A stretch of DNA of 64,000 bases from Macrostomum lignano. Taxonomy: Eukaryota. The notes beneath the pieces were generated by a model. The model was not told where the DNA came from and did not search any database. It saw only the letters and a program-made list of their open reading frames with translations. Positions 611-56,572 of the stretch are shown here, piece by piece. The translations under genes and the position numbers were made by a program. How positions within the stretch are numbered: the stretch's first letter is position 1; every line of letters begins with the position of its first letter. The stretch lies in contig NIVC01002805.1 of assembly GCA_002269645.1 (NCBI GenBank), positions 39,967-103,966 of the forward strand. Reading direction: 5' to 3'.

Positions 611-6447
<5,837 letters not shown>

Positions 6448-38540: not shown

Positions 38541-40811
38541 GACAGACAGAGACAGACAGACAGACAGACAGGCAGGCAGACAGACAGATACGTAGTAACC
38601 TTATCAGACACCCAGGTCACGCTGGCATATCCTACGGCAGCCCGCCCGCAGACGCCTCCAACTCAATAAGCTCAGCTGCCCAGAACGCACCCGTCAATCC
38701 CACCCGCTTCTTGCAGGCGTGGCACCGATTTCGCCTCTTCAATTCGCTGCTTCCGCCAACGACGCTGCCGCTTCCGCTGCCGCTGCTGGCGTCTGCAATT
38801 GTGTGTGCAGTTGCTGGTAATTAATTTATTTATTGCAACCAACATTCAAAACACTCTACTCTAAAAAGTAGCAAAACGCGCTAAGCAAGTAGCAAATATT
38901 CCAGAACTAACTCACCACAGGAAGCACCCCGAGAGGAGGCGGAGCCATCGTCCGTTGGAACGGCAAGCATAGCGGCTATGGACTGCGGCGTTGGGACTGA
39001 CAGGGGTAGGGGAAGATGCTGTTGCTGTTGTTGCTGCTGAGGCGATGCTTGAGACTCCTCAGCCGTAGGGGTTTCTGCTGAGGCTTGGGTGGAACAATAT
39101 TTTAATATTTAAAGCAGACTTAAAAGTTTTGATTAGCGCTATATAAATTTACAGAAAAATTTTAGGTATGGGAGGCTGGCCCAGCAACTGACGATCTGGG
39201 AGGCTGGCTCAGCAACTGACGATCAAGGATGGTAACCCATCAACTTGGGATCTGAGAAGGTAACGAAACAACTGAGGATCTGGGGATCTGGAAGGCTGGC
39301 ACAGCAACTGAGGATCTGGGAGGCTGGCACAGCAACTGCGGATCTGGGAGGCTGGCCCAGCAACTGCGGATCTGAGAGGCTGGCCCAGCAACTGACACTC
39401 TGGGAGGCTGACCCAGCAACTGAGGATCTGGGGATCTGGAAGGCTGGCACAGCAACTGAGGATCTGGGAGGCTGGCACAGCAACTGCGGATCTGGGAGGC
39501 TGGCCCAGCAACTGCGGATCTGAGAGGCTGGCCCAGCAACTGACACTCTGGGAGGCTGACCCAGCAACTGAGGATCTGAGAGGCTGGCCCAGCAACTGAC
39601 ACTCTGGGAGGCTGACCCAGCAACTGAGGATCTGGGGATCTGGAAGGCTGGCACAGCAACTGAGGATCTGGGAGGCTGGCACAGCAACTGCGGATCTGGG
39701 AGGCTGGCCCAGCAACTGCGGATCTGAGAGGCTGGCCCAGCAACTGACACTCTGGGAGGCTGACCCAGCAACTGAGGATCTGGGAGGCTGGCCCAGCAAC
39801 TGAGGATCTGGGAGGCTGGCCCAGCAACTGGGGATCTAGGAGGCTAGCCCAGTAACTGGGGATCTGGGAGGCTAGCCCAGTAACTGGGGATCTGGGAGGC
39901 TAGCCCAGTAACTGGGGATCTGGGAGGCTGGCCCAGCAACTGCGGATCTGGGAGGCTGGCCCAGCAACTGACACTCTGGGAGGCTGACCCAGCAACTGAG
40001 GATCTGGGAGGCTGGCCCAGCAACTGAGGATCTGGGAGGCTGACCCAGCAACTGCGGATCTGGGAGGCTGACCCAGCAACTGCGGATCTGGGAGGCTGGC
40101 CCAGCAACTGAGGATCTGAGAGGCTGGCCCAGCAACTGAGGATCTGGGAGGCTGGCCCAGCAACTGAGGATCTGAGAGGCTGGCCCAGCAACTGAGGATC
40201 TGGGAGGCTGGCCCAGCAACTGAGGATCTGGGAGGCTGGAGGCCTAGCAACTGAGGATCTGGGAGGCTGGAGGCCTAGCAACTGAGGATCTGGGAGGCTG
40301 GAGGCCTAGCAACTGAGGATCTGGGAGGCTGGAGGCCCAGCAACTGAGGATCTGGGAGGCTGGCTCAGCAACTGAGGATTTGGGAGGCTGGCTCAGCAAC
40401 TGAGGATCTGGGGGGATAACACATCAACTGAGGATCTGGGGGGATAACACATCAACTGAGGATCTGGGAGGCTGGCTCAGCAACTGAGGATTTGGGAGGC
40501 TGGCTCAGCAACTGAGGATCTGGGGGGATAACACATCAACTGAGGATCTGGGAGGATAACCCATAAAAGGAGGATCTTGAATCCCAGTTACCAATAGAGG
40601 AAGCTGTCGCAGAAGCCACATCATCAGCAGACGCGGCACCAGCCGCACTGACAGTGACAGAAACAGCTGCTGCGGCATCTCCAGCAGCTGTAGCCTTGAA
40701 GCAGACGCTGCACATGCCATCAAACTGGGCCGAGGCATAGAATCCGCAGCCGCATTTGCAGTAGGTTGGCGCCAAAGTTGCCGGCTGGTTGCTGCCGCTC
40801 TCCTCCGACAT
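37748..40811 (-). CDS. ZFAND5/6: A20/AN1 zinc-finger protein (ZFAND5/ZFAND6-like), 212 aa, 4 coding exons
   Basis: Exons 40592-40811, 38916-39083, 38691-38792, 37748-37896 join in frame (639 nt). A20 finger: [22 protein letters not shown]1 finger: [38 protein letters not shown]...ANP. Confidence 0.95.
37930..38590. repeat. (GATA)n / (GACA)n intronic microsatellites
   Basis: Direct reading. Confidence 0.95.
39165..40560. repeat. 28-bp minisatellite (ACTGAGGATCTGGGAGGCTGGCCCAGCA)n in ZFAND intron
   Basis: About 50 imperfect copies. Confidence 0.95.
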
Positions 40812-43800
40812 TCTTAAATAACTGTGCTTGGCTGTAGGAGGGGTTGAGAGATTTATAAGAGTTCGCCTAATGATAAGTAGCAAGAAAAGAATATGAAGCG
40901 AATATTTTATAAGTGTCTGACACCCATAGATGAGGTCTTGGCTTGGCTCAGCAGTTAAAATCATTAAAAAGTTATTCTTGGGCAGCATTATCTTCTGATG
41001 TTTATGACAATATGTATTTAATATTGCATGTATTTTAAAATCTTATGATCATATCAATGTTTCAGACTGCTTAGTTACAATATAAGCATTTCTTAGTAGA
41101 AATAGCAAAGTAGGCATATTGAGTAGGCAAAGTAGCTAAGTGTCATAGTGAATAATTTTATAATTTAATGCATAATTATATTTTAGCAATATGCACATAT
41201 ATTTATAAGGGCATGTCAACTAAAGCTCATAAAGTGGAGCCCAAGTAACCATGTACACTAATGATACGTTATTCTGCTCAGAGACACCAGAAGGCAGGGT
41301 TTGGCAAAAAAGTGACAAAAATTAGACTTTGGAGAAGAAGCACGAGGATAATTAGGCACTATTATGTTAACTTGAGCTGATAAAGTAGAGTCTCTATAAT
41401 TATCCCCTTATGCTTGTTCTCATCTTTTCTCCCAAGTCCAATTTTTGCCACTTTTGCTAAACCCAGCTTCCTAGTATCAGAACATGTTAACTCTTGCACA
41501 AAATACAGGCATAGTACTAATTAGATGATGAAGAATTTAGCTTTATTAAGATGGTCATAGTTACTCTTGCTGTTTGCCCAAAACTGCACCCACCCTGCTA
41601 CACTACCTACTTTGACTCCAGCTGCAATGCACCACCAGAATTTGTCCAGAAAATTTCAAAATTGTGATGGACAGTTGGATGCCTTTTGTCCACTTACTCC
41701 AATAGGGTATACAAGACCATACATGCATACAACCTCTCCCTTTGATTTACACAGGCCATATAACTTAATTTTGAACAAAAATGTGACTTACCTATGAAAG
41801 AAACCTAAACGAAATTGAGATTTATTTTGTTTTGTTGCAAAATTAGCTAACCCAAGATAGTAGGGTTGGCTAATTTTGGGTAAATGGCATGAGTAACTAT
41901 AAGGGGTGTCCCAAAAGTAGTGTTACTTTCATTATATCTCTCATTCTGCTGATCCAAATAACATAATTTTGCACAATTTTTTAGTGGCAACTCTTTTTCA
42001 TATTAACTTTAAAATCATTAAAACTGACAATGGAAACAAAAGCTATAAACTATAATGTAGCAGGACCTCAACCATAAACTTCAGTAAGTAAACAAAATAA
42101 CAAATTTCAAAGTGGTAGCTGACAAACGGGTAACTAGCTGTAGTGAATACTGCAAAATGACTGTAGTAAATGACTGCTAAGATCCATGAGCCAATGAAAG
42201 TTGAGCATGGATCTTGGTTCAACTGTGCCCCATCCTTCAAAGGGTGTATAACACACTCCTCTAAGCATTTTACATGCATTTTCCTTATTAGATTGTCATA
42301 ATTTTAATTTTCTTAATTTTTTATAGTAAAAAACAACAATCATTTTAATGACAAATTTTGTATAAAACTAGCATTATTAAGGCCTACCTAATTAATTATC
42401 TAGCTGTTTTCAGTGGTGGATTTAGAGGGGGTGGCCCCTCCCCCTTTGTTGAGTTAGATTTTTCTACAATTGGCTATCTTAGGAATAGGGGCATAGCCAA
42501 GGGGTAGACACTAGAGACATGTTTCCTTCCTAGGAGGGGGGGATTTTACTGCCTTTGTATTTCACTTCTATTACTTCTATTAGAGATGGAATTATAAGCA
42601 GAAAATTATCCCCACGGTACCGTTGGAATAAGACAGAAATTATTCCTACGGTACCGTGGGGATAAGCACTGCCATATCTTTTTCCCTCCATTTGATGTGA
42701 CTCCTGGCTATATACCTACTAGGCTACTTCTAGGAATATACTATTTGAGAAAAACTTAACTATTTTTAGCTTTCCTTTGTAGACTATTGATTTGTTGTTA
42801 TTATAAACTTATAAAAGATGGTTAATTAATTTTTTTAATTAGCAATTTGATTAGAACATGAAAAATATATAATAAAAAATATAGTATTAGGCCTAGCTTT
42901 AATGTTTCTAATTTAGGTTTATTTATAAATGATTTTTTAATTTGTGATTTCTTTAGATATTAGGGCCTAAGCTTAGAAAACAAAAAAAAATTGTTGCATT
43001 TCTCAATTTGCTCTGTATATGCTTGGTTTAAAAATCATATATAAAATGCTTTAATGCTTAGTTTCTTGACAAAGAAACTGCATGTATTGTCAATGGCTAT
43101 TGTTTTACTAATAAATTATACTTACTAAAATTTGGCAAATTTGGCAAAATGGCTAGGCATTAGCAAAACAAATTTTCTTGAAATTTCCTTATCGGCCCTT
43201 CATCTCATTTTTAAGAAAGTCAAGTGAGTAGCATCACTTCACTTCATGTCTTCACTCTTCGGTACCTTACTCACAATGTCAAGAAGTCTGCCTTTATCCT
43301 TATTAACTCCAGGCCTAGTCTAGGATGCAATTATGTTCATTTATTTCATTTTCATGGGCCTAGTCTATGCAAAGGAGGGGCACCCCCCTCCCTTGTCTTT
43401 ATCCGATCACCGGTCTCCAGTCTACAGCTGCAGACGCGGCTTGGTTATGGTGATGGTGGAAGGAAAATTATTATCAGCTACGCAAACAGCAGACAGAGGG
43501 CCTTTTCATATTGCTTGTTCTGGTTCCAGAACCAGAACAAATTTGTGAAGTATAACTTTTTGTCTCCATAACTAGAGGGAGATACGTGCTATAAAGTTTT
43601 TATTATTGAATGACAATCGCCAAGAACAAAGTGAAAAATTGTTCTAAGTGAGGTTGTTAAGGCAGTCAAACATTCAACAGAATTAAATAGTTATACTGCT
43701 GTTTTTCTTGGAAGATCCGAACCGATTCTGATTCTGGAATTTGTAATATGAAAAGCCTCAGACAGCAGACCGCGGCCGTAATCAGAGATTAGAATTTTGC

Positions 43801-44123
43801 CTCAATAATTTATGAGTAGCTGCAAAGTTTCTACTATCTGTTATTTGCAATTTAACACTAGCTGAAACCAAGATTTACATTTCTGAGATAAAATATAAAA
43901 ATAATATCTGTGTTTGTTTTGCTACATTACACAACAAACGTTAAAAAACGTATTTTTCAGGATTATTAAATATAGTTAATCTTGTAAATCTTGGTTTCAG
44001 CTAGTGTTAAATTAGTATAGGCCTGCCTAGAGGCCTGGCCTTCCTTTTTGTATAGATAGACAAAGAGCAAAACAGTCAGGCCTCGAATATTGAAGTCCCC
44101 AGGCCTATTCAAATGATACCTGC

Positions 44124-44348
44124 CAGGGGCGTAGCCAGGCATTTCCTATGGGGGGATACACGAAGGTGCATTTTCTACGGGGGGATACACCAAGGTAAAA
44201 GTGCTATGACAGAGTCACATTGTAGGGGCCTAGCATGTATAGCAACAAAGGGCAACAAAAAAGTTTTTTTCAGGCTTTTTGGAATTTTGGGGGGATACAA
44301 CAACAACAACATCCCCCTATCCCCCCTCCTTAGCTCCCTATACCCCTG
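44124..44348. mobile_element. hAT-like MITE, 225 bp
   Basis: Ends CAGGGG...CCCCTG flanked by an identical 8-bp TSD ATACCTGC (44116-44123 and 44349-44356); 8-bp TSDs are typical of hAT. Confidence 0.8.
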
Positions 44349-45447
44349 ATACCTGCATAGGCCTAATTTTTTATTTTTCAGCAATTTAACTTTCTGAGTT
44401 CTCAATTGAAATTTGAAAGAATGAATATTTTATAATTGATAGAAATAGGCCTATCAATGTTTTAAAGAAATTTCTTTTAGGCCTATGTTTTCAACAAAGA
44501 AGCTAGTAGTAGTAGGCCTATTAGTAGTACAATATATCAAGACAAACAAAACATAATAATATCATGATTCTGTAGACTATAGAGTAGGCCTAATTTTGAA
44601 AAAAAAATTACCTATGCTATTTTAGGCAATGGCTAGAGTTCTGGAACCAGAACCTGTTTTCTAATGGATAGGCCTATGGATCTGGCAATGCCATATAGAA
44701 CTTATAGAATAGAAGTATATAAAAAAGACTAATAAGAACATATATATTTAAAAGTCTAAACATTAGTAAGTATCTCATTTGAAATCTTGACTCATCATTT
44801 GGTCTTGAATCTTATCTAAACAAAATCTCAATATCTGCCACCTATAGAAAAATAATGTTCCTGCTATAGTATTATAATGGCCCTGCCAGATCTATAGCCT
44901 TGAAAAATTAGTTCTAATGCTGGAACTCTAGCCATTGCCATTATAATGGCATTATTTTATGTCCTCACTAGACTAGGCCTGCCTACTGCCTAGGACCTAT
45001 GTTATGCTAGGTCTAGGGTTGAAAACATGGTTCTCAATGTCAGTTTTTCTTTTGCTTTTAAGTGGCTTGTTGCCCTTTTAAGTTAGAAGACACTTTTTGT
45101 ATTACTTTTAACTAGGCTCTAATGAATGGCTTAATGCTTTTAAATGATTCAAACTTTAATAGGATCTAAGAGACTTTGCCAAGTAAATGACTTTCTATTA
45201 TCTCTACCTATAAAAATGAAAACTCTATGTCTCAGTGTCTCTCTGTGGACAATTTTGTTCACTATGGACTCCTAAACCACTTAACCCAGTTAACCAAATT
45301 ATACCAGATTTTGTACCCACCCTAAACTCACTACGGTCTACGGAAAATGTCTTAGGCTACTTTAAAATCTCCTAAACTTGAGTCTTCCTATCTAATTAAT
45401 CTAAAAGTGCAAAAACTGCTCAAAATATGCAATTTTTTTACTAAATC

Positions 45448-45900
<453 letters not shown>

Positions 45901-46879
45901 TCAAAGGATCCAAGGGACATAGGGAGAGTCAAAGGCAGAGGCCAGAGTTTACCAATATGTTTTAGAATCAAACAGACATTGCCCAACATTCTGCGCAGCA
46001 TCCCAGCCAACAAAATCAATGTTTGTCTCAAATCCTAATTTTACATGAATGTACTCCATTTTATGTTTGCCTCTATCCTACTAACTATTAACAAGTTTTT
46101 TTTGTGATGACTTTAGATTTTAGAACACAGGCAAAATAGTTCCAGGGATTAGAATTCCACGGGTTCAAAATCTGTAGGTTTCAACAGCTTGTCATTTATA
46201 AATATATATTGTTTAAACTAAATAAATGCTAGAGGAGAGAAGGCTACAGTGGCAGTGGCTAGGCCTAAGTGTAGAAAGTATAAGCCTAATTATTATTATA
46301 TAGGCCTATATTAACAATTTCAAATGCTTCTAAATTGGAAAATTTTTAGTTAAATTGTACAAATTTAAAGAAAATTTGTTGAGCTATTTTTGCTAAATTT
46401 GATCACATATATGCCTAATATTAATATACCTATAATATGAAAACTTTTTTAATATATTAAGACAAACAATCTGGTTTGAATAAACTGAGCCAACATGGGA
46501 CTTTACTTGATTTGCAATTTTGCCTAATAATGTCATCTTTTCCTGTGCCTCTCTCAAGGTGTTCTGTCATTAAAAGATTTTGCATTACTGTTTAGATGTA
46601 TCCTTATCAAGGCAAGCTATGCAGAAATATGTGTTCCTATGCCAGAATGTAGTCTTGAAATAAATTTTATATAATATTTTTCCCTCATGACATTCTATAC
46701 TTAGCATTTATAGCATTGGTAATTAAACTTATTGTTTTAATTATTCAAAAGGCAGTTTTGTTTTAATTTTTTACTGCCTAATATTGCATGAGCTGGTCAA
46801 ATCTTGACTTGGTAAAAAGCTTTCTACAGGAAAACAAAGTTAAAAGTGAGTTATATTTATATAATCAAACTGTCAGAAC

Positions 46880-47107
46880 CCTCTAGATCATCTAGGCTAG
46901 AATCCTCCAGATTTCTAGACCAGCCTCCCAGATCCTCAGTTGCTGGGCCAGCCTCCCAGATCCTCAGTTTCTGGGCCAGCCTCCCAGATCCTCAGTTGCT
47001 AGGCCAGCCTCCCAGATCCTCAGTTGCTAGGCCAGCCTCCCAGATCCTCAGTTGCTAGGCCAGCCTCCCAGAGTGTTAGTTGCTAGGCCAGCCTCCCAGA
47101 TCCTCAG
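46880..47107. repeat. 28-bp minisatellite, inverted copy of the 39.2-40.6 kb array
   Basis: (CCTCCCAGATCCTCAGTTGCTGGGCCAG)n, ~7 copies, is the reverse complement of the ZFAND-intron unit. Confidence 0.93.
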
Positions 47108-47407
47108 TTGCTTCACTCCCTTCACTCCCTGAAGGCTAAGCTGTCCCACCCCGCCCCTGCAGTCCAGCCCGAGGCGGCCCGGCAGTGCAACGAGCTCATT
47201 CGCCTGTTCGCCGAAGAGTGCGCGGTGAGGGCGGCCGGAGCCGCCAAAGCCAGATTGGCAGTCGCCGAGACCAAGCAAAAGCAGCAAAAGAAGAAGAATA
47301 AAGAAGACGAATTTGATGAAGCTGAGCCCTCCGATCCAAAAGTTGTTGAAGTTCGACTATCTGATCTCGAGTCTGAATTAGTTCAGCTCTGGTTGGATTT
47401 TATTTAA
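47108..47407 (+). CDS. CENPX: CENP-X / MHF2 (STRA13)-like histone-fold protein, main exon
   Basis: AARQCNELIRLFAEECAVRA...EVRLSDLESELVQLWLDFI* parallels the CENP-X pattern (..ELLKVFVVEAAVR...VDVDQLEKVLPQLLLDF), with a Lys/Glu-rich insertion. Probable acceptor cctcag|47108. The start exon is unresolved; 43748-43777 (ATG..GCC|gtaatc) is one candidate. Confidence 0.75.
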   Translation: MLHSLHSLKAKLSHPAPAVQPEAARQCNELIRLFAEECAVRAAGAAKARLAVAETKQKQQKKKNKEDEFDEAEPSDPKVVEVRLSDLESELVQLWLDFI

Positions 47408-47411
47408 TTTA

Positions 47412-50400
47412 ATGTCCTCATCAACACCCGATCGGCATCTCTTGGTGCTGGTGCTGGACCTCAATCCGGCTTGGTGGGGGCTCCAAACCGACACTGACGT
47501 GTGTCGGATGCTGCAGTCGGTGCTCACCTTTGCCAATGCTCACCTCCTGGTACAGCCGGGCAATGAAGTTGCTTTGTTAGGCGTCTGTGGAGAGCAGGTA
47601 TGGAAATTTGCTAGTTGTTGACCAAATAGTGAGCACCCCCAAAGCTTTCATGTTCATCCTTTCCTTTAGTAAATCTCCATTGCAATCTGCTAGATTTCCA
47701 TCAGATCGAAATCTCAACACCCCTTATGCCCATCCCATAGATCCACTTTCTAATCTCCCAGAGCCCAACATTAATCTGGTCTCATGCGTATCTATTAGAT
47801 CCCCATTCTTATCCATCAGATCCCCATCCTTATCCCCCACCCAGATCTCCATCCTTATCCCTCAGATCCCCATTCTTATCCCCCACCCAGATCTCCATCC
47901 TTATCCCTCAGATCCCCATCCTTATCCCCCACCCAGATCTCCATCCTTATCCCTCAGATCCCCATCCTTATCCCCCACCCAGATCTCCATCCTTATCCCT
48001 CAGATCCCCATCCTTATCCCCCACCCAGATCTCCATCCTTATCCCTCAGATCCCCATCCTTATCCCTTCACCCAGATCTCCATCCTTATCCCTCAGATCC
48101 CCATCCTTATCCCTTCACCCAGATCTCCATCCTTATCCCTTCACCCAGATCTCCATCCTTATCCCTTCACCCAGATCTCCATCCTTATCCCTTCACCCAG
48201 ATCTCCATCCTTATCCCTCAGATCCCCATCCTTATCCCTTCACCCAGATCTCCATCCTTATCCCTCAGATCCCCATCCTTATCCCCCACCCAGATCTCCA
48301 TCCTTATCCCTCAGATCCCCATCCTTATCCCTTCACCCAGATCTCCATCCTTATCCCTTCACCCAGATCTCCATCCTTATCCCTCAGATCCCCATCCTTA
48401 TCCCTTCACCCAGATCTCCATCCTTATCCCTTCACCCAGATCTCCATCCTTATCCCTCAGATCCCCATCCTTATCCCTTCACCCAGATCTCCATCCTTAT
48501 CCCTTCACCCAGATCTCCATCCTTATCCCTCAGATCCCCATCCTTATCCCTTCACCCAGATCTCCATCCTTATCCCTTCACCCAGATCTCCATCCTTATC
48601 CCTTCACCCAGATCTCCATCCTTATCCCTCAGATCCCCATCCTTATCCCTTCACCCAGATCTCCATCCTTATCCCTTCACCCAGATCTCCATCCTTATCC
48701 CTTCACCCAGATCTCCATCCTTATCCCTTCACCCAGATCTCCATCCTTATCCCTCAGATCCCCATCCTTATCCCCCACCCAGATCTCCATCCTTATCCCT
48801 CAGATCCCCATCCTTATCCCCCACCCAGATCTCCATCCTTATCCCTCAGATCCCCATCCTTATCCCTCAGATCCCCATCCTTATCCCCCACCCAGATCTC
48901 CATCCTTATCCCTCAGATCCCATCCTTATCCCCCACCCAGATCTCCATCCTTATCCCCCACCCAGATCTCCATCCTTATCCCTCAGATCCCCATCCTTAT
49001 CCCCCACCCAGATCTCCATCCTTATCCCTCAGATCCCCATCCTTATCCCCCACCCAGATCTCCATCCTTATCCCTCAGATCCCCATCCTTATCCCCCACC
49101 CAGATCTCCATCCTTATCCCTCAGATCCCATCCTTATCCCCCACCCAGATCTCCATCCTTATCCCCCACCCAGATCTCCATCCTTATCCCCCACCCAGAT
49201 CTCCATCCTTATCCCTCAGATCCCCATCCTTATCCCCCACCCAGATCTCCATCCTTATCCCTCAGATCCCATCCTTATCCCCCACCCAGATCACCCAAAT
49301 CCCTATTCTTATCCCTCATATCCCATACTTGTCCCTTAGATCCCCATCCTTATCCGTCAGATGAAATCCCATGGTACATTGCCTGATCCAAAATCTTCAT
49401 GCTAATCATTAATGTCTCTATTCTATTTATATATATTATATAAATTTATTATATATATAAACATAAATATTACATTATATATATATCCACTCAAACTCCC
49501 AAATCCCATAATTTTCACCTGGATTTGTATGCTTATTTATCCACAAAGTTCTCAATTGCATTGTAGTTAAATTAGTTTTCTTTTCCTTTCCCGCAGACTC
49601 AGTTCCTCTACCCCGCTGCTCAGTCGCCACCTGGCGGAGTGCCCCTCAGCCAACAGGGCCCGGCTCAAACCGACGGTGCCAAACTGGAATGCTTCACCGC
49701 AATGAACGACTGCGTGAAAGATGCCGCTGATTCTTTAATGCGCTCAGTGCAACCCGAGAAACTGCGCCTGTCAGTCTGCATGGCCGGCTGCTTAGTAAAG
49801 GCTCTGTGCTACATTGCCAGACGGGAGCGAGAAATACAACCCGGCGTACGGCTGGCTTCCAGGGTGCTGCTTCTGCGCGGCTGTCGCGACGAGGCCTCCC
49901 AGTACATGGCGCTGATGAATGCGGTGTTCGCCGCGCAGAAGCGTCAGATTCCTATTGACGCGTGCGTTATATCTGTGAGTCTTATTTATTAATTTTTGTG
50001 TTGTTTAGGCATGTTACGTCATTACTTACGTGTTTGAACAAATTTAAAACGATTTAGGCTTTCAAGCTACTTTCAATAGAAATATATAAATATTTAGCTA
50101 AAAAATACAAAAAATAACTAACTAACTAACTAAATAAGTAACTCCGGCGCCTCAGCCATTGAAATAGGCTCTTACGCCACTAGATATAAATAAGTTTCCT
50201 GAATAGGGAGTGTACTAATGTACACTAAAAGCCAAGTTAGACTATAGAGGACTGTACAGGGCAAAATCATAAAAACCAAACCTCCCCGGGGGACAGTAGC
50301 GGTTCGACGAACCAGTCAGGAGCCCGTGCCCAAAAACCAGGTTAGATACCCCTCAGCCTATTAGGAAGGCCCGAAGGCCAAGAGCCGTGGCATCCATGCT

Positions 50401-51499
50401 GGGGCCGACCGCCCCTCTACCCCCGGGTACAAATCATAAACCTCCCCGAGGCCCGTGGGGGTTGAGAGAACCAATCAGGGAAGCCCGTGCCTTCTCCTGG
50501 GTTAGTAAAGCCAAAACACCGGTCAATTGACCGCCCCCACGGCCGTGGCAACCCGAAGGAGCCTCCCCCCCCAACTAAACCCCGGGTACTCTTGCCAGAC
50601 AGTCTCTTATCTTTGAAGCGGCAGGAGGGCTATTCGCCGGGACTGTTTCACCCTTTGCTTCGCCAACCCGCCATTTCTATAGTGACCGTGCCAACGGTCT
50701 CGTCCTGCTCAGACTCAGTCCTGGTTCTGGCACACTCCAGCTTTAATAGGGTCGCTGGCTGTACGCTCAGAGGGCACTTGAGGGAGACCGTCAGAGCACC
50801 TTGGTACAGGTATAGGCCTGCCTTCCTATACAGCTACCCACAGCCCTTCCCGATCCACTATTACCCTCCAACCCAGCCTACTCACTCATTACAAGCTTTC
50901 AGCCAGGCAGAGACAAGTTTCACAGGAGTGACTGCGGTTAGGCGTCTCTATGCGAGACAAAACCAGCTAAAAAATACAAAAAATAATCTTATTAAGTAAG
51001 AATTAACTAATCTAGAAAAATCGTTTGGAATTTTCATTGATGAATAATTTTCTGTATTTAAGCTACTATTAGTAGGAATTCGAAATTCTTTGCTTCATTT
51101 TATTTCCAGTCGGATTCCACGTTGCTTCGCCAGGCCGCTGAGCTGTCTGGCGGTTTCTATCTTCGCCTGCCCCGGCCCAGCGCTCTGCTGCAGTGCCTGC
51201 TCAGCCTGTTCTTAGCCGAGCCGGCCGTCAGGCAGGCCTCCTTAACTTTGCCACCATCGTTGGGGCCGAGCGACTCTCGGCCGGCCTGTTTCTGCCATAG
51301 AAAGCTGGTGTCAATCGCTCACGTCTGCTCCATCTGCCTGTCCGTGTACTGCAGTTACACTCCGCTTTGCACAACTTGCCATGCCACTTTTCCCAAGCCT
51401 CAGCTGCCGGCTTACTTCAATGCTGCCAGGGCGCCTGGCAAGGGCGGCGGCGGCGGCGGCGGCGGCGGCGGCAAGTCAAAGCGGAACAGCAAGCCTTGA
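47412..51499 (+). CDS. GTF2H3: General transcription factor IIH subunit 3 (p34/Tfb4), 317 aa, 3 exons
   Basis: Exons 47412-47597, 49597-49974, 51110-51499, all phase 0 (954 nt). VWA-like LLVLVLDLNP..W, QYMALMNAVFAAQK.. IPIDAC, LRQAAELSGGFY, C-terminal zinc finger ACFCHRKLVSIAHVCSICLSVYC..CTTC. Confidence 0.96.
47815..49290. repeat. C-rich minisatellite (CCAGATCTCCATCCTTATCCCTTCAC-type, mixed 19-26-bp units) in GTF2H3 intron 1
   Basis: Direct reading; source of the spurious 599-aa ORF. Confidence 0.95.
50118..50964 (-). mobile_element. 847-bp non-coding retroposed element (non-LTR-type insertion) in GTF2H3 intron 2
   Basis: Flanked by a 22-bp direct repeat AGCTAAAAAATACAAAAAATAA (50096-50117 and 50965-50986). 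(CTAA)n at the left end reads as a (TTAG)n 3' tail on the minus strand. Much more GC-rich than the flanks. Confidence 0.8.
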
Positions 51500-51577
51500 T
51501 TGGAATTTTGTTTTGTTGCGGCTGAATGAATTTCTTGGAATTCTGACCTGTTTGGTACGAACGTACATGGATTGATG

Positions 51578-52043
51578 GGTTAGTTTACTAGTTGATTGGG
51601 TGGTTGATTGATTTATTGGCTGATTGATTGATTGGCTGGTTGATTGATTGATTGATAAATTGGCTGGTTGATTGATTGATTGATTAATTGGCTGGTTGAT
51701 TGATTGATTGATTGATTGATTGGCTGGTTGATTGATTGATTGATTGATTGGCTGGTTGATTTATTGATTAATAGATTGATTGATTGGCTGGTTGATTGAT
51801 TGATTGATTGATTGGCTGGTTGGCTGATTGATTGGCTGGTTGATTGATTAGCTGGTTGATTGATTGATTGATTGATTGATTGGCTGATTGATTGATTGGT
51901 TGATTGATTGGCTGGTTGATTGGCTGGTTGATTGATTGGCTGGTTGATTGGCTGGTTGATTGATTGGCTGGTTGATTGGCTGGTTGATTAATTGGCTGGT
52001 TGATTGATTGGCTGGTTGATTGATTGATTGATTAATTCGCTGG

Positions 52044-52075
<32 letters not shown>

Positions 52076-52455
52076 CTGGTTGGTTGATTGATTGATTGGC
52101 TGGTTGATTGATTGATTGATTAATAGATTGATTGATTTGTCTGGTTGATTGATTGATTGATTGATTGGCTGGTTGGCTGATTGATTGGCTGGTTGATTGA
52201 TTGATTGGTTGATTGATTGGCTGGTTGATTGATTAATTGATTGGCTGATTGATTGATTGATTAATTGGTTGATTGGCTGGTTGATTGATTAATTGATTGG
52301 CTGATTGATTGATTGATTAATTGGTTGATTGGCTGGTTGATAAGTTGATCGATCGGTTGGTTGGTTGATTGATTAGTTGATTGGTTGGGTGGTTGATTGG
52401 GTGGTTGATTAGTTGATTGATTGATTGATTGACTGGCTGGTTGATTGATAGATTT
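51578..52455. repeat. (ATTG)n/(TTGGCTGG) compound microsatellite
   Basis: Direct reading. Confidence 0.93.
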
Positions 52456-52929
52456 TTTTTAATCATTTGGATGACTAAGCAGCTGATCAAGCTGTGTTGA
52501 CGAATTGATTGATCAGACGGATTGCCTAATCGATGGGATAATCAGTTAATCTGAATCCCACAGATTATTGGCCATGCCCGCCAATCTGGGGGCATCAAAG
52601 CTGCTCATGCTAATACCGGTTCTGTTATCCATTTTCATTCGTTAGATCAAAGTAAATCAATGCCTCTGTGCTATATGTGACCTAGTTGTGTGCAATGTGC
52701 TCGTGTGAGGTTGCACATCATGCCACCCTGTTGCATTCAAGTTCATGTACCGTAAATTCCTGATATTCCCATTACTTACTAAGTAGTATGTTAAAAATTA
52801 AACCAGCGTTTTTTAATGCGCCTATGGTGGAATTCTTTGCGGCATTTTTTCTGTGCGTTATTACAATTTCTGCCTTTTTTTACTTATTAAAAAGTTACAA
52901 TTAAGATTCTTTAATGATCATATCGTTTT

Positions 52930-53950
52930 CTTAGAATAAGCGCCCCAGTTTTTTTGGAATAATCGCCCCGGATTTCTTGGAATAATCGCCCCAGATTTCT
53001 TAGAATAAGCGCCCAGATTTTTTGAAAAAATTGCCCAAGATTTTTTGGAATAATTGCACCATATTTGTTAGAATAATGGCAACCGTTTTCTTGGAATAAT
53101 CACCATAGTTTTTTGGAATAATCGCCCCGGATTTCTTAGAATAATGCCCCAGATTTCTTGGAATAATCGCCCCAGATTCTTGGAATAGTCGCCCCCAGAT
53201 TTCTTAAAATAATCGCCCCAGATTCTTGGAATAATCGCCCCATATTTCTTGGAATAATCGCCCCATCTTTCTTGAAATAATCGCCCCATCTTTCTTGAAA
53301 TAATCGCCTGTTTTCTTGGAAAAATCACTCAAGATTTCTTGGAATAATTGCACCATATTTCTTAGAATAATAGCAACCGTTTTCTTGGAATAATCGCCCC
53401 CGTTTTTTAAGGATAATCGCCATATTTTTTTGGAAAAATCGCCTCCGTTGTTTGAGTAAGTCTTCAGCTTTCAAGATTAATCGCCCCCGATTTCTTAAAA
53501 TAATCGCCCCAGATTTCTTGGAATAATTTCCCTAGTGGAATAATCGCCTAGATTTATTAAAATAATCGCCCCAGATTTCTTGGAATAATCGCCCATATTT
53601 ATTGGAATTATCGCCCCAGATTCTTGGAATAATCACCCAGAATTCTTGGAATAATCGCCCCAGATTCTTGGAATAATCACCCAGAATTCTTGGAATAATC
53701 ACCCAGAATTCTTGGAATAATCGCCCCAGATTCTTGGAATAATCGCCCCATATTTCTTGGAATAATCGCCCCATATTTCTTGAAATAATTGTCTCATATT
53801 TCTTGGAAAAAATGCCCAAGATTTCTTGGAATAATTGCACCATATTTCTTAGAATAATAGCAACCGTTATCTTGGAATAATCACCATAGTTTTTTGGAAT
53901 AATCGCCCACGATTTCTTAGAAAATCATCATAGTTTTCTTGGAATAATTC
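52930..53950. repeat. ~23-bp minisatellite (TTGGAATAATCGCCCCAGATTTC)n
   Basis: Tandem imperfect copies. Confidence 0.92.
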
Positions 53951-53984
53951 CTCGGCAACCCCGCAGCACCAGCAGCAACCGAAC

Positions 53985-54293
53985 ATGCCACTGTGCGGAG
54001 GAACCGGAGAGGCTCGCCAGCCGTCACCCGAAGAGGTCGAACTCCTAGTTGCCATGCGACCCCATGTTGAGTCCCGCCTCGGCCGTTCGGTCGAACAATT
54101 TGAGCCTCGCCTAGTTGCCACCCAGGTGGTGGCCGGAACCAACTACTTTGCCAAGGTGCACATTGGCAGCGATTCGTTTGTCCACATCCGCGTGTTCAAG
54201 CCGCTGCCGCACACCAACGAGCCGCCGGCTCTGCACGGCATTCAGGCCGAGAAGTCCGCTAGCGATGAGCTGGCATTCTTCAGCTCCGAGTGA
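53985..54293 (+). CDS. Type-1 cystatin (stefin, cystatin-A/B-like), 102 aa, intronless
   Basis: N-terminal Gly (LCGG), hallmark QVVAG, GTNYFAKV, VHIRVFKPLP; no signal peptide. Confidence 0.95.
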   Translation: MPLCGGTGEARQPSPEEVELLVAMRPHVESRLGRSVEQFEPRLVATQVVAGTNYFAKVHIGSDSFVHIRVFKPLPHTNEPPALHGIQAEKSASDELAFFSSE

Positions 54294-54464
54294 GCGAGCA
54301 CCTTAATTACCTGCTAATTGGTCTGGGGGGGGGGGGCTGATTTCAATACAAACTAAACAATAAAATTGATCGGAGCCCAGTTTGATTGCTGCAAAATCCC
54401 AATTATATTATTCCGTTTTTTACCACTGCTTGCTACTGACCAGCAGTGCGTAGTAGTGTGTTGA

Positions 54465-55112
54465 GGGGCGTCGCCACCGGGGGGGGGACAAGGAGGTTAT
54501 GTCCTGCAAGTAAAAGCTATGGGGGGTGGGGGGACATGCCAATGTTTTGTCCCCCCACCCAACCTTCTAACCAGAAATCAATAATCAATAATTTTGCGTT
54601 AAATTGAGTGTCTGCGGCGCCACAATGAGTGTCTGCGGCGCCACAATGAGTGTCTGCGGCGCCACAATGAGTGTCAGTGGCGCTAAAATGAGTGCCTGCG
54701 GCGCCACAATGAGTGCCTGCGGCGCTAAATTGAGTGTCTGCGGCGCCACAATGAGTGCCTGCGGCGCCACAATGACAATGAGTGTCTGCGGCGCCACAAT
54801 GAGTGTCTGCGGCGCCAAAATGAGTGTCTGCGGCGCCACAATGAGTGCCTCCGGCGCCAAAATGAGTGCCTGCGGCGCCACAATGAGTGCCTGCGGCGCC
54901 AAAATGAGTGCCTGCGGCGCCACAATGAGTGCCTGCGGCGCCAAAATGAGTGTCTGCGGCGCCACAATGAGTGCCTGCATCGCCACAATGAGTGCCTGCG
55001 GCGTTAAAATCAGCGCTGACAACACCGATTCTGAAGAATGTACATTTACAATTGTACATCTAGAATTCTTGGCTTTGTCCCCCCCCCACCATAAAATCCA
55101 TGGCGACGCCCC
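54465..55112. mobile_element. MITE-like element with internal 21-bp minisatellite
   Basis: Perfect 12-bp TIR GGGGCGTCGCCA / TGGCGACGCCCC. Internal (GTCTGCGGCGCCACAATGAGT)n. Shares repeat and tail with 20345-20674. No clear TSD. Confidence 0.75.
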
Positions 55113-55374
55113 AGTCTTGGTAAATTGTGTCGATTTTTTGTTTAATTTCTCATTAGCAATATCATGATTTTTTTCTATTTATTCTCGCGATTAATCGATC
55201 GATTTTTTTACTGTAAATCGGCACTCTAAACGGTAATAAAAGTATGCAACTTATTCAGTACCTCAACTATTATATGAGGCATCCTTATAAATCAAATCCT
55301 TGTCTCGAGTTCTCTCAATGATAAATTGCCTATTTTTTTCATTTTCTCATCCTTCGCAATCGGGAGTTGGGTAA

Positions 55375-55610
55375 TCGATCAATCAATCAATCGATTGCAC
55401 CCAAGTCGTTGGGATTAGTTTTCAAGATCTCTGCTAGCTTCGGGCACTGTGCCATTTTATGTAACTAAAGCTGTGGGATCTTATATTTTGTTTCTTTTTA
55501 TCTGAGCATTGCCGTGGCAAAATTTAGCGCACACAAGTCCCGAATATTTGTGGGGCCGCGCAGGGAATCGAACCAAGAAACCCTTTGACTGCTGAGCTGC
55601 TCTGCCTTCC
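55375..55610 (-). mobile_element. Possible degenerate tRNA-derived SINE (second family)
   Basis: Minus strand has a B-box GGTTCGATTCC and a (GATT)n tail; the rest is poorly conserved. Confidence 0.35.
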
Positions 55611-55659
55611 TCCAATTAAATTTTCTAAATGTCCATCACGTCGGTCGCAACTACGAGCG

Positions 55660-56572
55660 GATCTATCAATCCATCTATCCATCTATCTATCTATCCACCT
55701 GTCCATCTATCTATCCATCTATCCACCTGCCCATCTATCTATCCATCTATCCATCTATCTATCTATCCACCTGTCCATCTATCTATCCATCTATCCACCT
55801 GTCCATCTATCTATCCATCAATCCACCTGTCCTTCTATCTATCCATCTGTCCATCTATCTATCTATCCATCTATCTATCTATCTATCCATCTTTCCATCT
55901 ATCTATCTATCCATCCATCTATCCATCTATCCATCTGTCCATCTATCTATCCATCTATCCACCTGTCCATCTATCCATCTGTCCATCTATCCACCTGTCC
56001 ATCTATCTATCCATCTATCCACCTGTCCATCTATCTATCCATCTATCCATCTGTCCATCTATCTATCTGTCCATCTATCTATCCATCTATCCACCTGTCC
56101 ATCTATCCATCTGTCCATCTATCCACCTGTCCATCTATCTATCCATCTATCCACCTGTCCATCTATCTATCGATCTATCCACCTGTCCATCTATCTATCC
56201 ATCTATCCATCTGTCCATCTATCTATCCATCTATCCATCTGTCCATCTATCTATCCATCTGTCCATCTATCTATCCATCTATCCATCTACCTATCTGTCC
56301 ATCTATCTATCCATCTGTCCATCTATCTATCCATCTGTCCATCTATCTATCCATCTATCCACCTGTCCATCTATCCACCTGTCCATCTACCCATCTGTCC
56401 ATCTATCTATCCATCTGTCTATCTATCTATCCATCTGTCCATCTATCTATCCATCTATCCACCTGTCCATCTACCCATCTGTCCATCTATCTATCCATCT
56501 GTCCATTTATCTATCCGTCTATCCATCTGTCCATCTATCTATCCATCTGTCCATCTATCTATCTATCTATCT
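55660..56572. repeat. (ATCT/ATCC/ACCT) compound microsatellite
   Basis: Direct reading. Confidence 0.95.

What the first reader, a model, noticed from the sequence alone, without database searches (positions are those of the whole stretch)
47108..47597. CENP-X-like ORF ends 4 nt before the GTF2H3 start codon (TAA-TTTA-ATG): candidate bicistronic or operon-like unit
Seen: the stop TAA at 47405-47407 and the GTF2H3 ATG at 47412 are separated by only TTTA, leaving no room for a 3'UTR, poly(A) site or promoter. Established: CENP-X/MHF2 works in kinetochore and Fanconi-anaemia (FANCM) repair, and p34 in TFIIH transcription and nucleotide excision repair; both are normally separate genes. Inference: one mRNA may encode both proteins via termination-reinitiation or leaky scanning. 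Alternatively, GTF2H3 mRNA is produced by cis- or SL trans-splicing to an AG inside the CENP-X CDS (e.g. gttcag|47387), making the two products mutually exclusive. I know of no described CENPX-GTF2H3 coupling.
Basis: partly seen in the sequence, partly recalled or inferred. Interest (0 to 1): 0.8.

Follow-up and report, generated by a model that had tools for sequence, protein, structure and literature searches.

The report
Flatworm CENP-X–TFIIH p34 tight operon junction
Two unrelated housekeeping genes (CENP-X and the TFIIH subunit GTF2H3) lie only 4 bases apart in the flatworm Macrostomum lignano, most likely as neighbours in one of its many spliced-leader operons; the gap is so small that the two messages must overlap.

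Summary
A complete two-exon CENP-X gene ends at TAA 47405-47407. A complete three-exon GTF2H3/Tfb4 gene starts at ATG 47412. Only TTTA lies between them.

The window is 100% identical to Macrostomum lignano assembly Mlig_3_7, contig NIVC01002805.1. In this flatworm about 30% of genes are spliced-leader (SL) trans-spliced and about 15% sit in operons. The same junction occurs in a second, diverged genomic copy.

Public annotation fits one transcription unit, CENP-X, then GTF2H3, then a cystatin gene:
- The deposited CENP-X model is named "g1".
- The second copy of the cystatin is named "g3".
- Two UniProt models wrongly fuse CENP-X and GTF2H3 through an impossible 16-nt intron.

The unusual detail is that no AG lies between 47387 and the ATG. 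Any SL acceptor for GTF2H3 must therefore sit inside the CENP-X coding exon. Any CENP-X message must run into GTF2H3.

The most likely mechanism is either/or processing of one precursor RNA. Coupled translation of a bicistronic mRNA, or an internal promoter, is not excluded. No read-level RNA data could be examined.

Verdict: a new member of a known kind, with an extreme junction and moderate interest.

The parts
46788..46845 (+). CENP-X exon 1, encoding MSWSNLDLVKSFLQENKVK plus the first base of the next codon. The ATG is at 46788-46790.
   Evidence: Read from the sequence. It matches the deposited RNA-seq-derived model PAA55129.1/P0001, 'SWSNLDLVKSFLQENKVKIQPEAARQ...'. It is 100% identical in the second genomic copy L007 at 5074-5131.
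46846..47162 (+). CENP-X intron (GTGAGT...CTGCAG). It holds 7.5 copies of a 28-bp satellite at 46902-47112.
   Evidence: The splice is required to reproduce P0001.
47163..47407 (+). CENP-X exon 2 including the stop TAA at 47405-47407. Bases 47163-47284 are GC-rich (67%) and bases 47285-47407 are AT-rich (37% GC).
   Evidence: Pfam PF09415 scores 38.4 bits on the spliced protein. PDB best hits are CENP-X chains. Composition shift.
47405..47414 (+). The junction: TAA (CENP-X stop), TTTA spacer, ATG (GTF2H3 start).
   Evidence: Identical in the second copy L007 at 6254-6263.
47385..47386 (+). Candidate SL trans-splice acceptor AG (ttagttcAG|CTCTGG). It is the AG closest to the GTF2H3 ATG, 20 nt before the CENP-X stop. 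Use of this site would give a 25-nt leader in which the SL's own AUG opens a 7-codon uORF, MLWLDFI*.
   Evidence: It is the acceptor that the chimeric UniProt models use for their 16-nt 'intron'. It partly fits the published acceptor motif [T/C]TNCAG. Its use is inferred, not shown.
47283..47284 (+). Candidate SL acceptor AG (aaaagcAG|CAAAAG). It coincides with the 3' end of the deposited 'g1' CENP-X model and with the GC-to-AT composition break.
   Evidence: P0001's coding sequence ends at 47284. Composition. uORF consequences. The cut could instead be an oligo-dT internal-priming artefact on the A-rich stretch 47285-47306.
47161..47162 (+). Cis-splice acceptor of CENP-X exon 2 (cTGCAG|). It is also a possible shared cis/trans acceptor.
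   Evidence: It fits [T/C]TNCAG perfectly. Both UniProt chimeric models start exactly here. Sharing of acceptors between cis- and trans-splicing is common in flatworms (PMC12582326).
47412..47597 (+). GTF2H3/Tfb4 exon 1 (62 codons, MSSSTPDRHLLVLVLDLNPAWWG...).
   Evidence: Pfam Tfb4. 100% identical in L007, where the deposited coding sequence starts at the equivalent ATG.
47598..49596 (+). GTF2H3 intron 1. It is filled by a 1.5-kb tandem repeat at 47797-49292, which creates a spurious 599-aa ORF.
49597..49974 (+). GTF2H3 exon 2 (126 codons).
   Evidence: The model reproduces UniRef A0A1I8GS65 at 100% identity.
51110..51499 (+). GTF2H3 exon 3 with the zinc-binding cysteines and the stop TGA at 51497-51499.
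53967..54293 (+). Cystatin gene, the probable third cistron. The deposited model starts immediately after the acceptor cccgcAG (53965-53966).
   Evidence: Its second-copy homologue is named BOX15_Mlig030572g3. The distance from the GTF2H3 stop is about 0.6 kb once the two tandem arrays are subtracted.

Best explanation
CENP-X, GTF2H3 and probably the downstream cystatin gene form one SL-trans-splicing operon of Macrostomum lignano, transcribed from a promoter upstream of CENP-X exon 1. GTF2H3 gets its own capped 5' end by addition of the 35-nt spliced leader at an AG inside CENP-X exon 2. Candidate sites, most to least likely, put the first exon base at 47387, 47285 or 47163.

Every such acceptor lies upstream of the CENP-X stop codon, so a precursor that is trans-spliced there can no longer yield a CENP-X message. 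CENP-X must therefore be translated, as the 5' ORF, from precursors that escape trans-splicing and still carry at least part of GTF2H3. Each precursor molecule gives one product or the other.

Shown: gene identities, exon structures, the 4-nt spacing, the absence of an AG in the last 25 nt, conservation in a second genomic copy, and the species.

Inferred: co-transcription, the use and position of the SL acceptor, and the 3' end of the CENP-X message.
For: 1. Species. L001, from GCA_002269645.1, is 100% identical to window 36791-57284.
2. SL biology of the species. [quoted passage not shown] Deposited gene models were 'cut' from transcription units at experimentally mapped SL and poly(A) sites (PMC8629364; PMC5730564).
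3. Deposited names. CENP-X is Mlig014280 'g1'. The second copy of the cystatin is Mlig030572 'g3'. In that second locus the only coding sequence called between them is GTF2H3, starting at the equivalent ATG.
4. The cystatin model begins exactly after an AG acceptor. This shows that model ends in this annotation do mark SL sites.
5. Two independent gene models (A0A1I8GS65 and A0A1I8JGG5) fuse CENP-X exon 2 to GTF2H3 through a 16-nt GT..AG 'intron'. Such chimeras are what mis-annotated flatworm operons typically look like (PMC12582326).
6. The closest GTF2H3 relative found, a transcript contig 45% identical, starts with a flatworm-type leader ending ...CATTGCATG. SL trans-splicing of this gene therefore has precedent.
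7. Sequence constraints. There is no AG in 47387-47411. The only AATAAA in 46700-52000 lies inside the CENP-X CDS.
8. Both CDSs are conserved between the two genomic copies: 3/303 and 8/927 differences, against about 3.4% in non-repeat non-coding sequence.
Against: - No RNA read, SL tag or poly(A) tag was seen directly, and the public genome-browser tracks were not available.
- The GTF2H3 model is missing from the deposited annotation of this copy. The 'g2' name for GTF2H3 in the other copy could not be confirmed, because the exact-sequence look-up failed.
- None of the three candidate acceptors has a strong polypyrimidine tract.
- The 3' cut of 'g1' at 47284 may be an internal-priming artefact rather than an SL site.
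- The 5' cut at 46791 is not preceded by an AG. It is probably an artefact of a genomic 9-mer identical to the SL 3' end. The deposited boundaries are therefore not all reliable.
- With an SL ending in AUG, each candidate site except 47382 puts one or two uORFs ahead of the GTF2H3 AUG.
Confidence: 0.6

Rival explanations
1. True bicistronic translation. The mature mRNA carries both ORFs. GTF2H3 is translated from it either by leaky scanning past the two upstream AUGs or by termination-reinitiation across TAA-TTTA-ATG.
For: The stop and the start are 4 nt apart. Only two AUGs precede the GTF2H3 AUG in the cis-spliced mRNA, and both have a U at -3 (tattgcAUGa, aatttgAUGa), a weak context. No canonical poly(A) signal separates the ORFs. 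About 7% of assembled M. lignano transcripts carry two or more ORFs (PMC5730564). The stop/start region lies in an unpaired stretch between two predicted stem domains, and the 151-nt fold has z = -3.1.
Against: The upstream ORF is 100 codons long, well above the length that allows efficient reinitiation (established knowledge). No UGGGA/TURBS-like motif occurs within 160 nt upstream. The GTF2H3 AUG context is no better than the upstream ones. The species has a dedicated, widely used way of resolving such units, namely SL trans-splicing. The multi-ORF transcripts were interpreted by their authors as precursors.
Confidence: 0.1
2. Overlapping but independent transcription units. GTF2H3 has its own promoter inside the CENP-X gene (intron or exon 2), and CENP-X mRNA is polyadenylated at a non-canonical site inside GTF2H3 exon 1 or intron 1.
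For: Nothing in the sequence forbids it. The AT-rich second half of CENP-X exon 2 (37% GC) could hold initiation sites. In parasitic flatworms some SL acceptors are thought to be fed by internal promoters (PMC12582326).
Against: The genome is large and repeat-rich, with no pressure for compaction. Operons are common in it. The chimeric models and the g1/g3 naming indicate RNA continuity across the junction. No recognisable poly(A) hexamer follows the CENP-X stop for several hundred bases.
Confidence: 0.15
3. The CENP-X reading frame is a decaying relic, and this sequence now serves only as outron or 5' leader of GTF2H3.
For: The last 40 codons have GC3 of 0.2-0.4, against 0.7-1.0 in the preceding 40 codons. 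The protein carries a roughly 30-residue lineage-specific Lys/Glu-rich insertion. Pairwise similarity to solved CENP-X chains is weak (E 0.18). No other CENP-X relatives of this sequence were found in the protein database.
Against: The ORF, the GT-AG intron and the conserved C-terminus are intact in both diverged genomic copies. There are only 3 differences in 303 nt, against about 3.4% in non-coding flanks. Pfam CENP-X scores above its curated threshold over nearly the full profile. The exon 1-exon 2 splice is in the RNA-seq-derived deposited model.
Confidence: 0.08
4. A CENP-X-GTF2H3 fusion protein made by splicing out 47371-47386, as in UniProt A0A1I8GS65 and A0A1I8JGG5.
For: Two database models predict it. 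The 16-nt segment has GT..AG ends.
Against: A 16-nt intron is far below the minimum for animal spliceosomal introns (established knowledge). Both models are 5'-partial. The deposited Mlig_3_7 model of the second genomic copy starts GTF2H3 at the ATG. Both proteins end and start exactly where their orthologues do.
Confidence: 0.02

Closest known systems
SL-resolved operons of Macrostomum lignano and other flatworms (Ustyantsev & Berezikov 2021, PMC8629364; Wudarski et al. 2017, PMC5730564; parasitic flatworms, PMC12582326)
   Same: Same species, same strand, and functionally unrelated housekeeping genes. A downstream gene with a mapped SL-type acceptor (the cystatin). Chimeric gene models of the kind typical of mis-annotated operons.
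   Different: The published mode of repeat-adjusted intergenic distance in M. lignano operons is about 100 bp. In S. mansoni all 45 analysed pairs had at least 5 bp between the poly(A) site and the SL acceptor (median 99 bp). Here the two coding sequences themselves are 4 nt apart. No 3'UTR, poly(A) site or acceptor can lie between them.
Intercistron-less operons: C. elegans SL1-type operons and most Ciona intestinalis operons (Satou et al. 2006, PMC1488885)
   Same: No intercistronic DNA. The expected consequence, discussed explicitly for Ciona, is that one precursor can yield either the upstream or the downstream mRNA but not both. The canonical AAUAAA is often absent.
   Different: In those operons the upstream gene keeps a 3'UTR, and its poly(A) site abuts the acceptor AG. 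Here the nearest AG lies 20 nt upstream of the upstream gene's stop codon. The acceptor is therefore inside the coding sequence, and cleavage at it would give a message with no stop codon.
Dicistronic eukaryotic mRNAs with coupled translation (viral termination-reinitiation with TURBS; Drosophila dicistronic genes) — from general knowledge
   Same: The stop and the start are within a few nucleotides of each other, with two complete ORFs in series.
   Different: No TURBS-like motif is present and the upstream ORF is long. The host also has SL trans-splicing, which makes translational coupling unnecessary.
CENP-X/MHF2 (Pfam PF09415) and TFIIH p34/GTF2H3/Tfb4 (Pfam PF03850)
   Same: Both proteins match their families above the curated thresholds, over essentially the full profiles.
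   Different: The CENP-X carries a roughly 30-residue charged insertion before the last helix. No linkage of the two genes was found in abalone or in a tunicate, and no paper describing one was found.

Membership tests
SL-resolved operon (flatworm type) | The organism performs SL trans-splicing and has operons | tested here: met
   The window is 100% identical to M. lignano Mlig_3_7. SL and operon statistics come from PMC8629364.
SL-resolved operon (flatworm type) | Neighbouring genes on the same strand at very short distance | tested here: met
   4 nt between the stop and the start. The third gene lies about 0.6 kb downstream after subtracting repeats.
SL-resolved operon (flatworm type) | Co-transcription as one precursor | tested here: inconclusive
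   Indirect only: the g1 and g3 names of the deposited models and chimeric models spanning the junction. No reads were examined.
SL-resolved operon (flatworm type) | The downstream mRNA carries the SL at an AG upstream of its AUG | not testable with these tools
   Candidate AGs are listed. A related species' GTF2H3 transcript has an SL-like 5' end. No M. lignano reads or cDNA were available.
SL-resolved operon (flatworm type) | An intercistronic spacer between the upstream poly(A) site and the downstream acceptor | tested here: not met
   Only TTTA separates the two CDSs, with no AG and no poly(A) hexamer.
Intercistron-less operon (C. elegans SL1-type / Ciona) | The upstream poly(A) site directly abuts the downstream acceptor AG, downstream of the upstream stop codon | tested here: not met
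   The last AG before the ATG (47385-47386) lies upstream of the CENP-X stop at 47405-47407.
Intercistron-less operon (C. elegans SL1-type / Ciona) | Either/or processing of a single precursor | not testable with these tools
   It follows logically from the geometry if the SL is used. It needs long-read RNA data.
Translationally coupled dicistronic mRNA | Stop and restart codons overlap or lie within a few nucleotides | tested here: met
   TAA-TTTA-ATG.
Translationally coupled dicistronic mRNA | A short upstream ORF or a reinitiation-promoting element (TURBS UGGGA motif) | tested here: not met
   The upstream ORF is 100 codons. No TGGGA occurs in 47250-47411.
Translationally coupled dicistronic mRNA | A mature capped, polyadenylated mRNA holding both ORFs, with both translated | not testable with these tools
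   No transcript or ribosome-profiling data were available.
CENP-X / MHF2 (PF09415) | Profile match above the curated threshold over the histone-fold region | tested here: met
   38.4 bits against a 25-bit cut-off, profile positions 7-74 of 74. Five of the six PDB hits, including the top four, are CENP-X chains, but all are weak (E 0.18-1.1).
CENP-X / MHF2 (PF09415) | Histone-fold heterodimer with CENP-S/MHF1 | not tested
   No structure prediction was run and CENP-S was not searched for in this genome.
TFIIH p34 / Tfb4 (PF03850) | Full-length profile match including the C-terminal Cys-rich zinc-binding motif | tested here: met
   239.8 bits, profile positions 2-273 of 273. The invariant residues C248, C250, H251, C261, C264, C275 and C278 are kept in the alignment with five orthologues.

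The most novel reading that the evidence does not exclude
CENP-X and GTF2H3 are both translated from one mature bicistronic mRNA. Ribosomes reach the GTF2H3 AUG by leaky scanning past two weak-context AUGs, or by reinitiation 4 nt after the CENP-X stop. This would be an animal nuclear mRNA with genuine prokaryote-like translational coupling, in a species that can be made transgenic.
Probability: 0.1. Interest if true: 0.7.

Novelty: new member of a known kind. Interest (0 to 1): 0.38.

Why it matters
Operons resolved by spliced-leader trans-splicing are well known in this flatworm, so the pairing itself is ordinary. The geometry is of some value. With only 4 nt between the coding sequences and no AG in the last 25 nt, the acceptor for the downstream message has to lie inside the upstream reading frame.

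That makes this locus a clean natural test case for a question left open since the SL1-type operons of C. elegans and the intercistron-less operons of Ciona. Are upstream and downstream mRNAs made from the same precursor molecule, or is it one or the other? And how is the ratio set?

M. lignano has working transgenesis. Both candidate acceptor AGs in the second half of the exon sit in CAG (Gln) codons, which can be changed silently to CAA.

The locus also flags two chimeric UniProt entries and one truncated GenBank model that should be corrected.

Tried and rejected
- **Transcript contigs.** I looked for contigs of either M. lignano protein in the large protein and contig collection. There were none. 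Only genome-derived and UniRef models exist, and exact look-ups of my spliced models failed.
- **Supplementary tables.** I searched the supplements of three papers for Mlig014280, GTF2H3 and CENPX and found nothing.
- **Literature.** I searched for any CENPX-GTF2H3 link and found only co-mentions in DNA-repair gene lists.
- **Conservation in other flatworms.** Two GTF2H3 searches returned no other named flatworm genome. Only a mollusc (Haliotis) and a tunicate (Clavelina) could be checked. Neither has CENP-X within 10 kb of GTF2H3 by annotation or tblastn. Sensitivity for such a short, intron-split gene is low. The Lineus isoform was not on record.
- **SL relic at the CENP-X start.** The 9-mer TATTGCATG at 46782-46790 is identical to the SL 3' end. 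Such near-matches occur at chance frequency in the window (7 found, 5.6 expected), so I treat it as coincidence. It probably misled SL-read trimming in the published pipeline.
- **Fusion protein through the 16-nt 'intron'.** Rejected as an annotation artefact.
- **TURBS-like motif.** Absent.
- **Structured RNAs.** No Rfam family matched in 40000-56000.
- **RNA fold around the junction.** z = -3.1. The second genomic copy is identical here, so covariation cannot be tested. I do not use this as evidence.
- **Apparent frameshift in the ML2-derived CENP-X (AREGGRS in P0036).** It is not present in the Mlig_3_7 second copy, so it is probably an assembly error rather than decay.
Full report
**What is in the sequence**

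The junction reads GAA TTA GTT CAG CTC TGG TTG GAT TTT ATT TAA | TTTA | ATG TCC TCA. The TAA is at 47405-47407 and the ATG at 47412-47414.

The upstream frame is not a free-standing ORF starting at 47108. It is exon 2 of a two-exon gene:
- exon 1, 46788-46845, with the ATG at 46788;
- a GTGAGT...CTGCAG intron, 46846-47162, which carries 7.5 copies of a 28-bp satellite;
- exon 2, 47163-47407.

The splice reproduces the deposited protein PAA55129.1 (P0001...NKVKIQPEAARQ...). The spliced 100-aa product scores 38.4 bits (E 1.6e-9) on Pfam CENP-X, covering profile positions 7-74 of 74, against a 25-bit cut-off. Its best matches among solved structures are CENP-X chains, although these are weak (E 0.18). 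It ends LVQLWLDFI*, where human CENP-X ends LPQLLLDF. It carries a roughly 30-residue Lys/Glu-rich insertion before the last helix.

The downstream gene has three exons: 47412-47597, 49597-49974 and 51110-51499. The 317-aa product scores 239.8 bits on Pfam Tfb4 over profile positions 2-273 of 273. It is 100% identical to the GTF2H3 part of a UniRef M. lignano entry. It keeps the invariant zinc-binding cysteines. Its N-terminus has the usual length: nine residues precede the LLV motif. Both genes are therefore complete, and each ends or starts where its orthologues do.

**Where the window comes from**

A 20.5-kb locus fetched from GenBank assembly GCA_002269645.1 (Macrostomum lignano Mlig_3_7, contig NIVC01002805.1) is 100% identical to window 36791-57284. 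The window is the last 64 kb of that contig.

M. lignano is a free-living flatworm with a single 35-nt spliced leader (SL) ending in AUG. [quoted passage not shown] The acceptor motif is [T/C]TNCAG, and the mode of repeat-adjusted intergenic distance in operons is about 100 bp (PMC8629364). The deposited gene models were made by cutting RNA-seq 'transcriptional units' at mapped SL and poly(A) sites and numbering the pieces g1, g2 and so on (PMC5730564).

**Evidence for one transcription unit**

- The deposited CENP-X model is BOX15_Mlig014280g1.
- A cystatin gene lies 2.5 kb downstream of GTF2H3, or about 0.6 kb once two tandem arrays are subtracted. Its deposited model begins exactly after the acceptor cccgcAG at 53965-53966. 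This shows that model ends in this annotation can mark SL sites.
- The nearly identical cystatin in a second locus is named BOX15_Mlig030572g3. In that locus (L007) the only coding sequence called upstream of it runs from the equivalent GTF2H3 ATG to the equivalent stop, 321 residues. The simplest reading is g1 = CENP-X, g2 = GTF2H3, g3 = cystatin. I could not confirm the g2 name.
- Two UniProt entries built on the older ML2 assembly (A0A1I8GS65 and A0A1I8JGG5) start at the first bases of CENP-X exon 2. They run into GTF2H3 by removing 47371-47386, a 16-nt GT..AG 'intron' that shifts the frame. Such an intron is not credible. Chimeric models of this kind are what a 2025 survey found to be mis-annotated operons in parasitic flatworms (PMC12582326).
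- The closest GTF2H3 relative in the databases is a 1.2-kb transcript contig with 45% identity. It begins with a flatworm-type leader (...GTTGTAATTCATTGCATG) followed by a 129-nt 5' leader.

**The junction is not an artefact and is under constraint**

The second locus L007 (contig NIVC01003527.1) differs from the window by about 3.4% in non-repeat non-coding sequence, plus many indels. The CDSs differ far less: CENP-X by 3/303, GTF2H3 by 8/927 and the cystatin by 5/327. Bases 47285-47597, which include the junction, are identical between the two loci. CENP-X is intact in both copies. The three differences are one synonymous and two conservative changes (V53A, T56A).

**Why the junction is unusual even for an operon**

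There is no AG between 47387 and the ATG. The only AATAAA between 46700 and 52000 lies inside the CENP-X CDS at 47297. Consequently:
- an SL acceptor for GTF2H3 can only lie inside CENP-X exon 2;
- a message encoding full-length CENP-X must extend into GTF2H3.

I see four candidate positions for the first exon base after SL addition.

| First exon base | Acceptor context | Consequence |
|---|---|---|
| 47387 | ttagttcAG\| | Nearest to the ATG; 25-nt leader. The SL's AUG opens a 7-codon uORF, MLWLDFI*, in the CENP-X frame. |
| 47382 | gaattAG\| | The SL's AUG would be in frame with GTF2H3 and add 11 residues. |
| 47285 | aaaagcAG\| | Coincides with the 3' end of the deposited g1 model and with a sharp composition break. 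Codons 21-60 have GC3 0.7-1.0 and codons 61-100 have GC3 0.2-0.4. That cut may instead reflect oligo-dT priming on the A-rich stretch. |
| 47163 | cTGCAG\| | The exon-2 cis acceptor itself, a perfect motif match and the start of both UniProt chimeras. |

Published operon classes do not cover this geometry:
- C. elegans SL2-type operons and the S. mansoni operons analysed have a spacer between the poly(A) site and the acceptor. In S. mansoni it was at least 5 bp in all 45 pairs (median 99 bp).
- C. elegans SL1-type operons and Ciona operons have none, but their acceptor still follows a 3'UTR.

The Ciona authors already argued that spacer-less operons may give either the upstream or the downstream mRNA from each precursor. 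Here that conclusion would be forced.

**Most likely mechanism (confidence about 0.6)**

One precursor is transcribed from upstream of 46788. Molecules that receive the SL inside exon 2 become GTF2H3 mRNA and lose CENP-X. Molecules that escape are cis-spliced only. They serve as CENP-X mRNA, with GTF2H3 as a mostly silent downstream ORF.

**Rival mechanisms**

- Genuine translational coupling on the bicistronic RNA (about 0.1). It is favoured by the weak contexts of the only two upstream AUGs. It is disfavoured by the 100-codon upstream ORF and the absence of a TURBS-like motif.
- An internal promoter (about 0.15).
- CENP-X as a relic (about 0.08), disfavoured by its conservation.
- A real fusion protein (about 0.02).

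**Comparison outside flatworms**

GTF2H3 loci of an abalone and a tunicate have no CENP-X within 10 kb. In humans the two genes are on different chromosomes (from my own knowledge). No paper links the two genes. Other flatworm genomes could not be reached with the available searches, so the age of the linkage is unknown.

**Verdict**

The operon-like interpretation is supported in kind, but the mechanism is unresolved. This is a new member of a well-known class, with an extreme overlapping-cistron geometry that is worth a simple check against existing SL-read and 3'-end data.

Noticed in passing
window 46782-46790 (and L007 5068-5076): The nine bases ending in the CENP-X start codon (TATTGCATG) are identical to the 3' end of the M. 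lignano spliced leader. The deposited model PAA55129.1 starts at 46791, right after them, so it lacks its ATG, and no AG precedes that point. This is probably SL-read trimming fooled by a chance match. Near-matches occur at chance frequency in the window (7 found, 5.6 expected).
   Followed up: partly
window 47371-47386: UniProt A0A1I8GS65 and A0A1I8JGG5 ('General transcription factor IIH subunit 3') are chimeras of CENP-X exon 2 and GTF2H3. The two parts are joined by a 16-nt GT..AG pseudo-intron. Both entries should be split.
   Followed up: yes
window 53960-53990: The cystatin model starts directly after the acceptor cccgcAG. The SL's terminal AUG would be in frame with it (M-HQQQPN-MPLCGG...). 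The SL AUG could therefore act as initiator and add seven residues. The deposited coding sequence is marked 5'-partial.
   Followed up: partly
window 46902-47112 (+) and 39209-40555 (opposite orientation): The same 28-bp satellite (ATCCTCAGTTGCTAGGCCAGCCTCCCAG) sits in the CENP-X intron and, inverted, about 6.5 kb upstream. The two arrays bracket the A20-zinc-finger gene (40536-40988, minus strand) and CENP-X exon 1.
   Followed up: no
window 47797-49292: A 1.5-kb tandem array (26/46/73-bp units) fills GTF2H3 intron 1 and creates a spurious 599-aa ORF (47587-49386). The second genomic copy has a much shorter intron 1 (716 nt). This may explain why GTF2H3 is annotated in that copy but not in this one.
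   Followed up: partly
window 50118-50964: About 850 bp in GTF2H3 intron 2 is absent from the second genomic copy L007. It is probably a mobile-element insertion. The 170-aa ORF at 50487-50999 lies almost entirely inside it.
   Followed up: no
window 47285-47407: The last 40 codons of CENP-X switch to AT-ending codons (GC3 about 0.3, against about 0.8 just before and 0.69 in GTF2H3). This stretch has no substitution between the two genomic copies. That fits an extra, non-coding role such as outron or leader, but it is not proof.
   Followed up: partly
window 47330-47480: The predicted RNA fold is more stable than shuffled sequences (-49.6 kcal/mol, z = -3.1). The candidate acceptor at 47385-47386 sits in a small hairpin, and the stop/spacer/start lies unpaired between two stem domains. 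Covariation cannot be tested because the second copy is identical here.
   Followed up: no
L002 1-160 (Logan SRR26183987 contig): A GTF2H3 transcript from an unidentified organism, 45% identical to M. lignano GTF2H3, starts with a flatworm-type SL-like sequence ending ATTCATTGCATG. The AUG of that leader opens a 32-codon uORF ahead of the main AUG.
   Followed up: partly
L004 and L008 (NIVC01004766.1, NIVC01004563.1): Two further contigs carry the downstream part of this locus. L004 runs from GTF2H3 intron 2 through exon 3 onward, and L008 from exon 3 onward; both hold the cystatin and an ASC/ENaC-type channel gene. L004 is 99.6% identical to the window. L008's best pieces are 82-89% identical, similar to L007 over the same stretch, so it looks like another copy of the L007-type locus. 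This fits the known duplicated state of the DV1 line assembly. Both contigs end before the CENP-X/GTF2H3 junction.
   Followed up: partly
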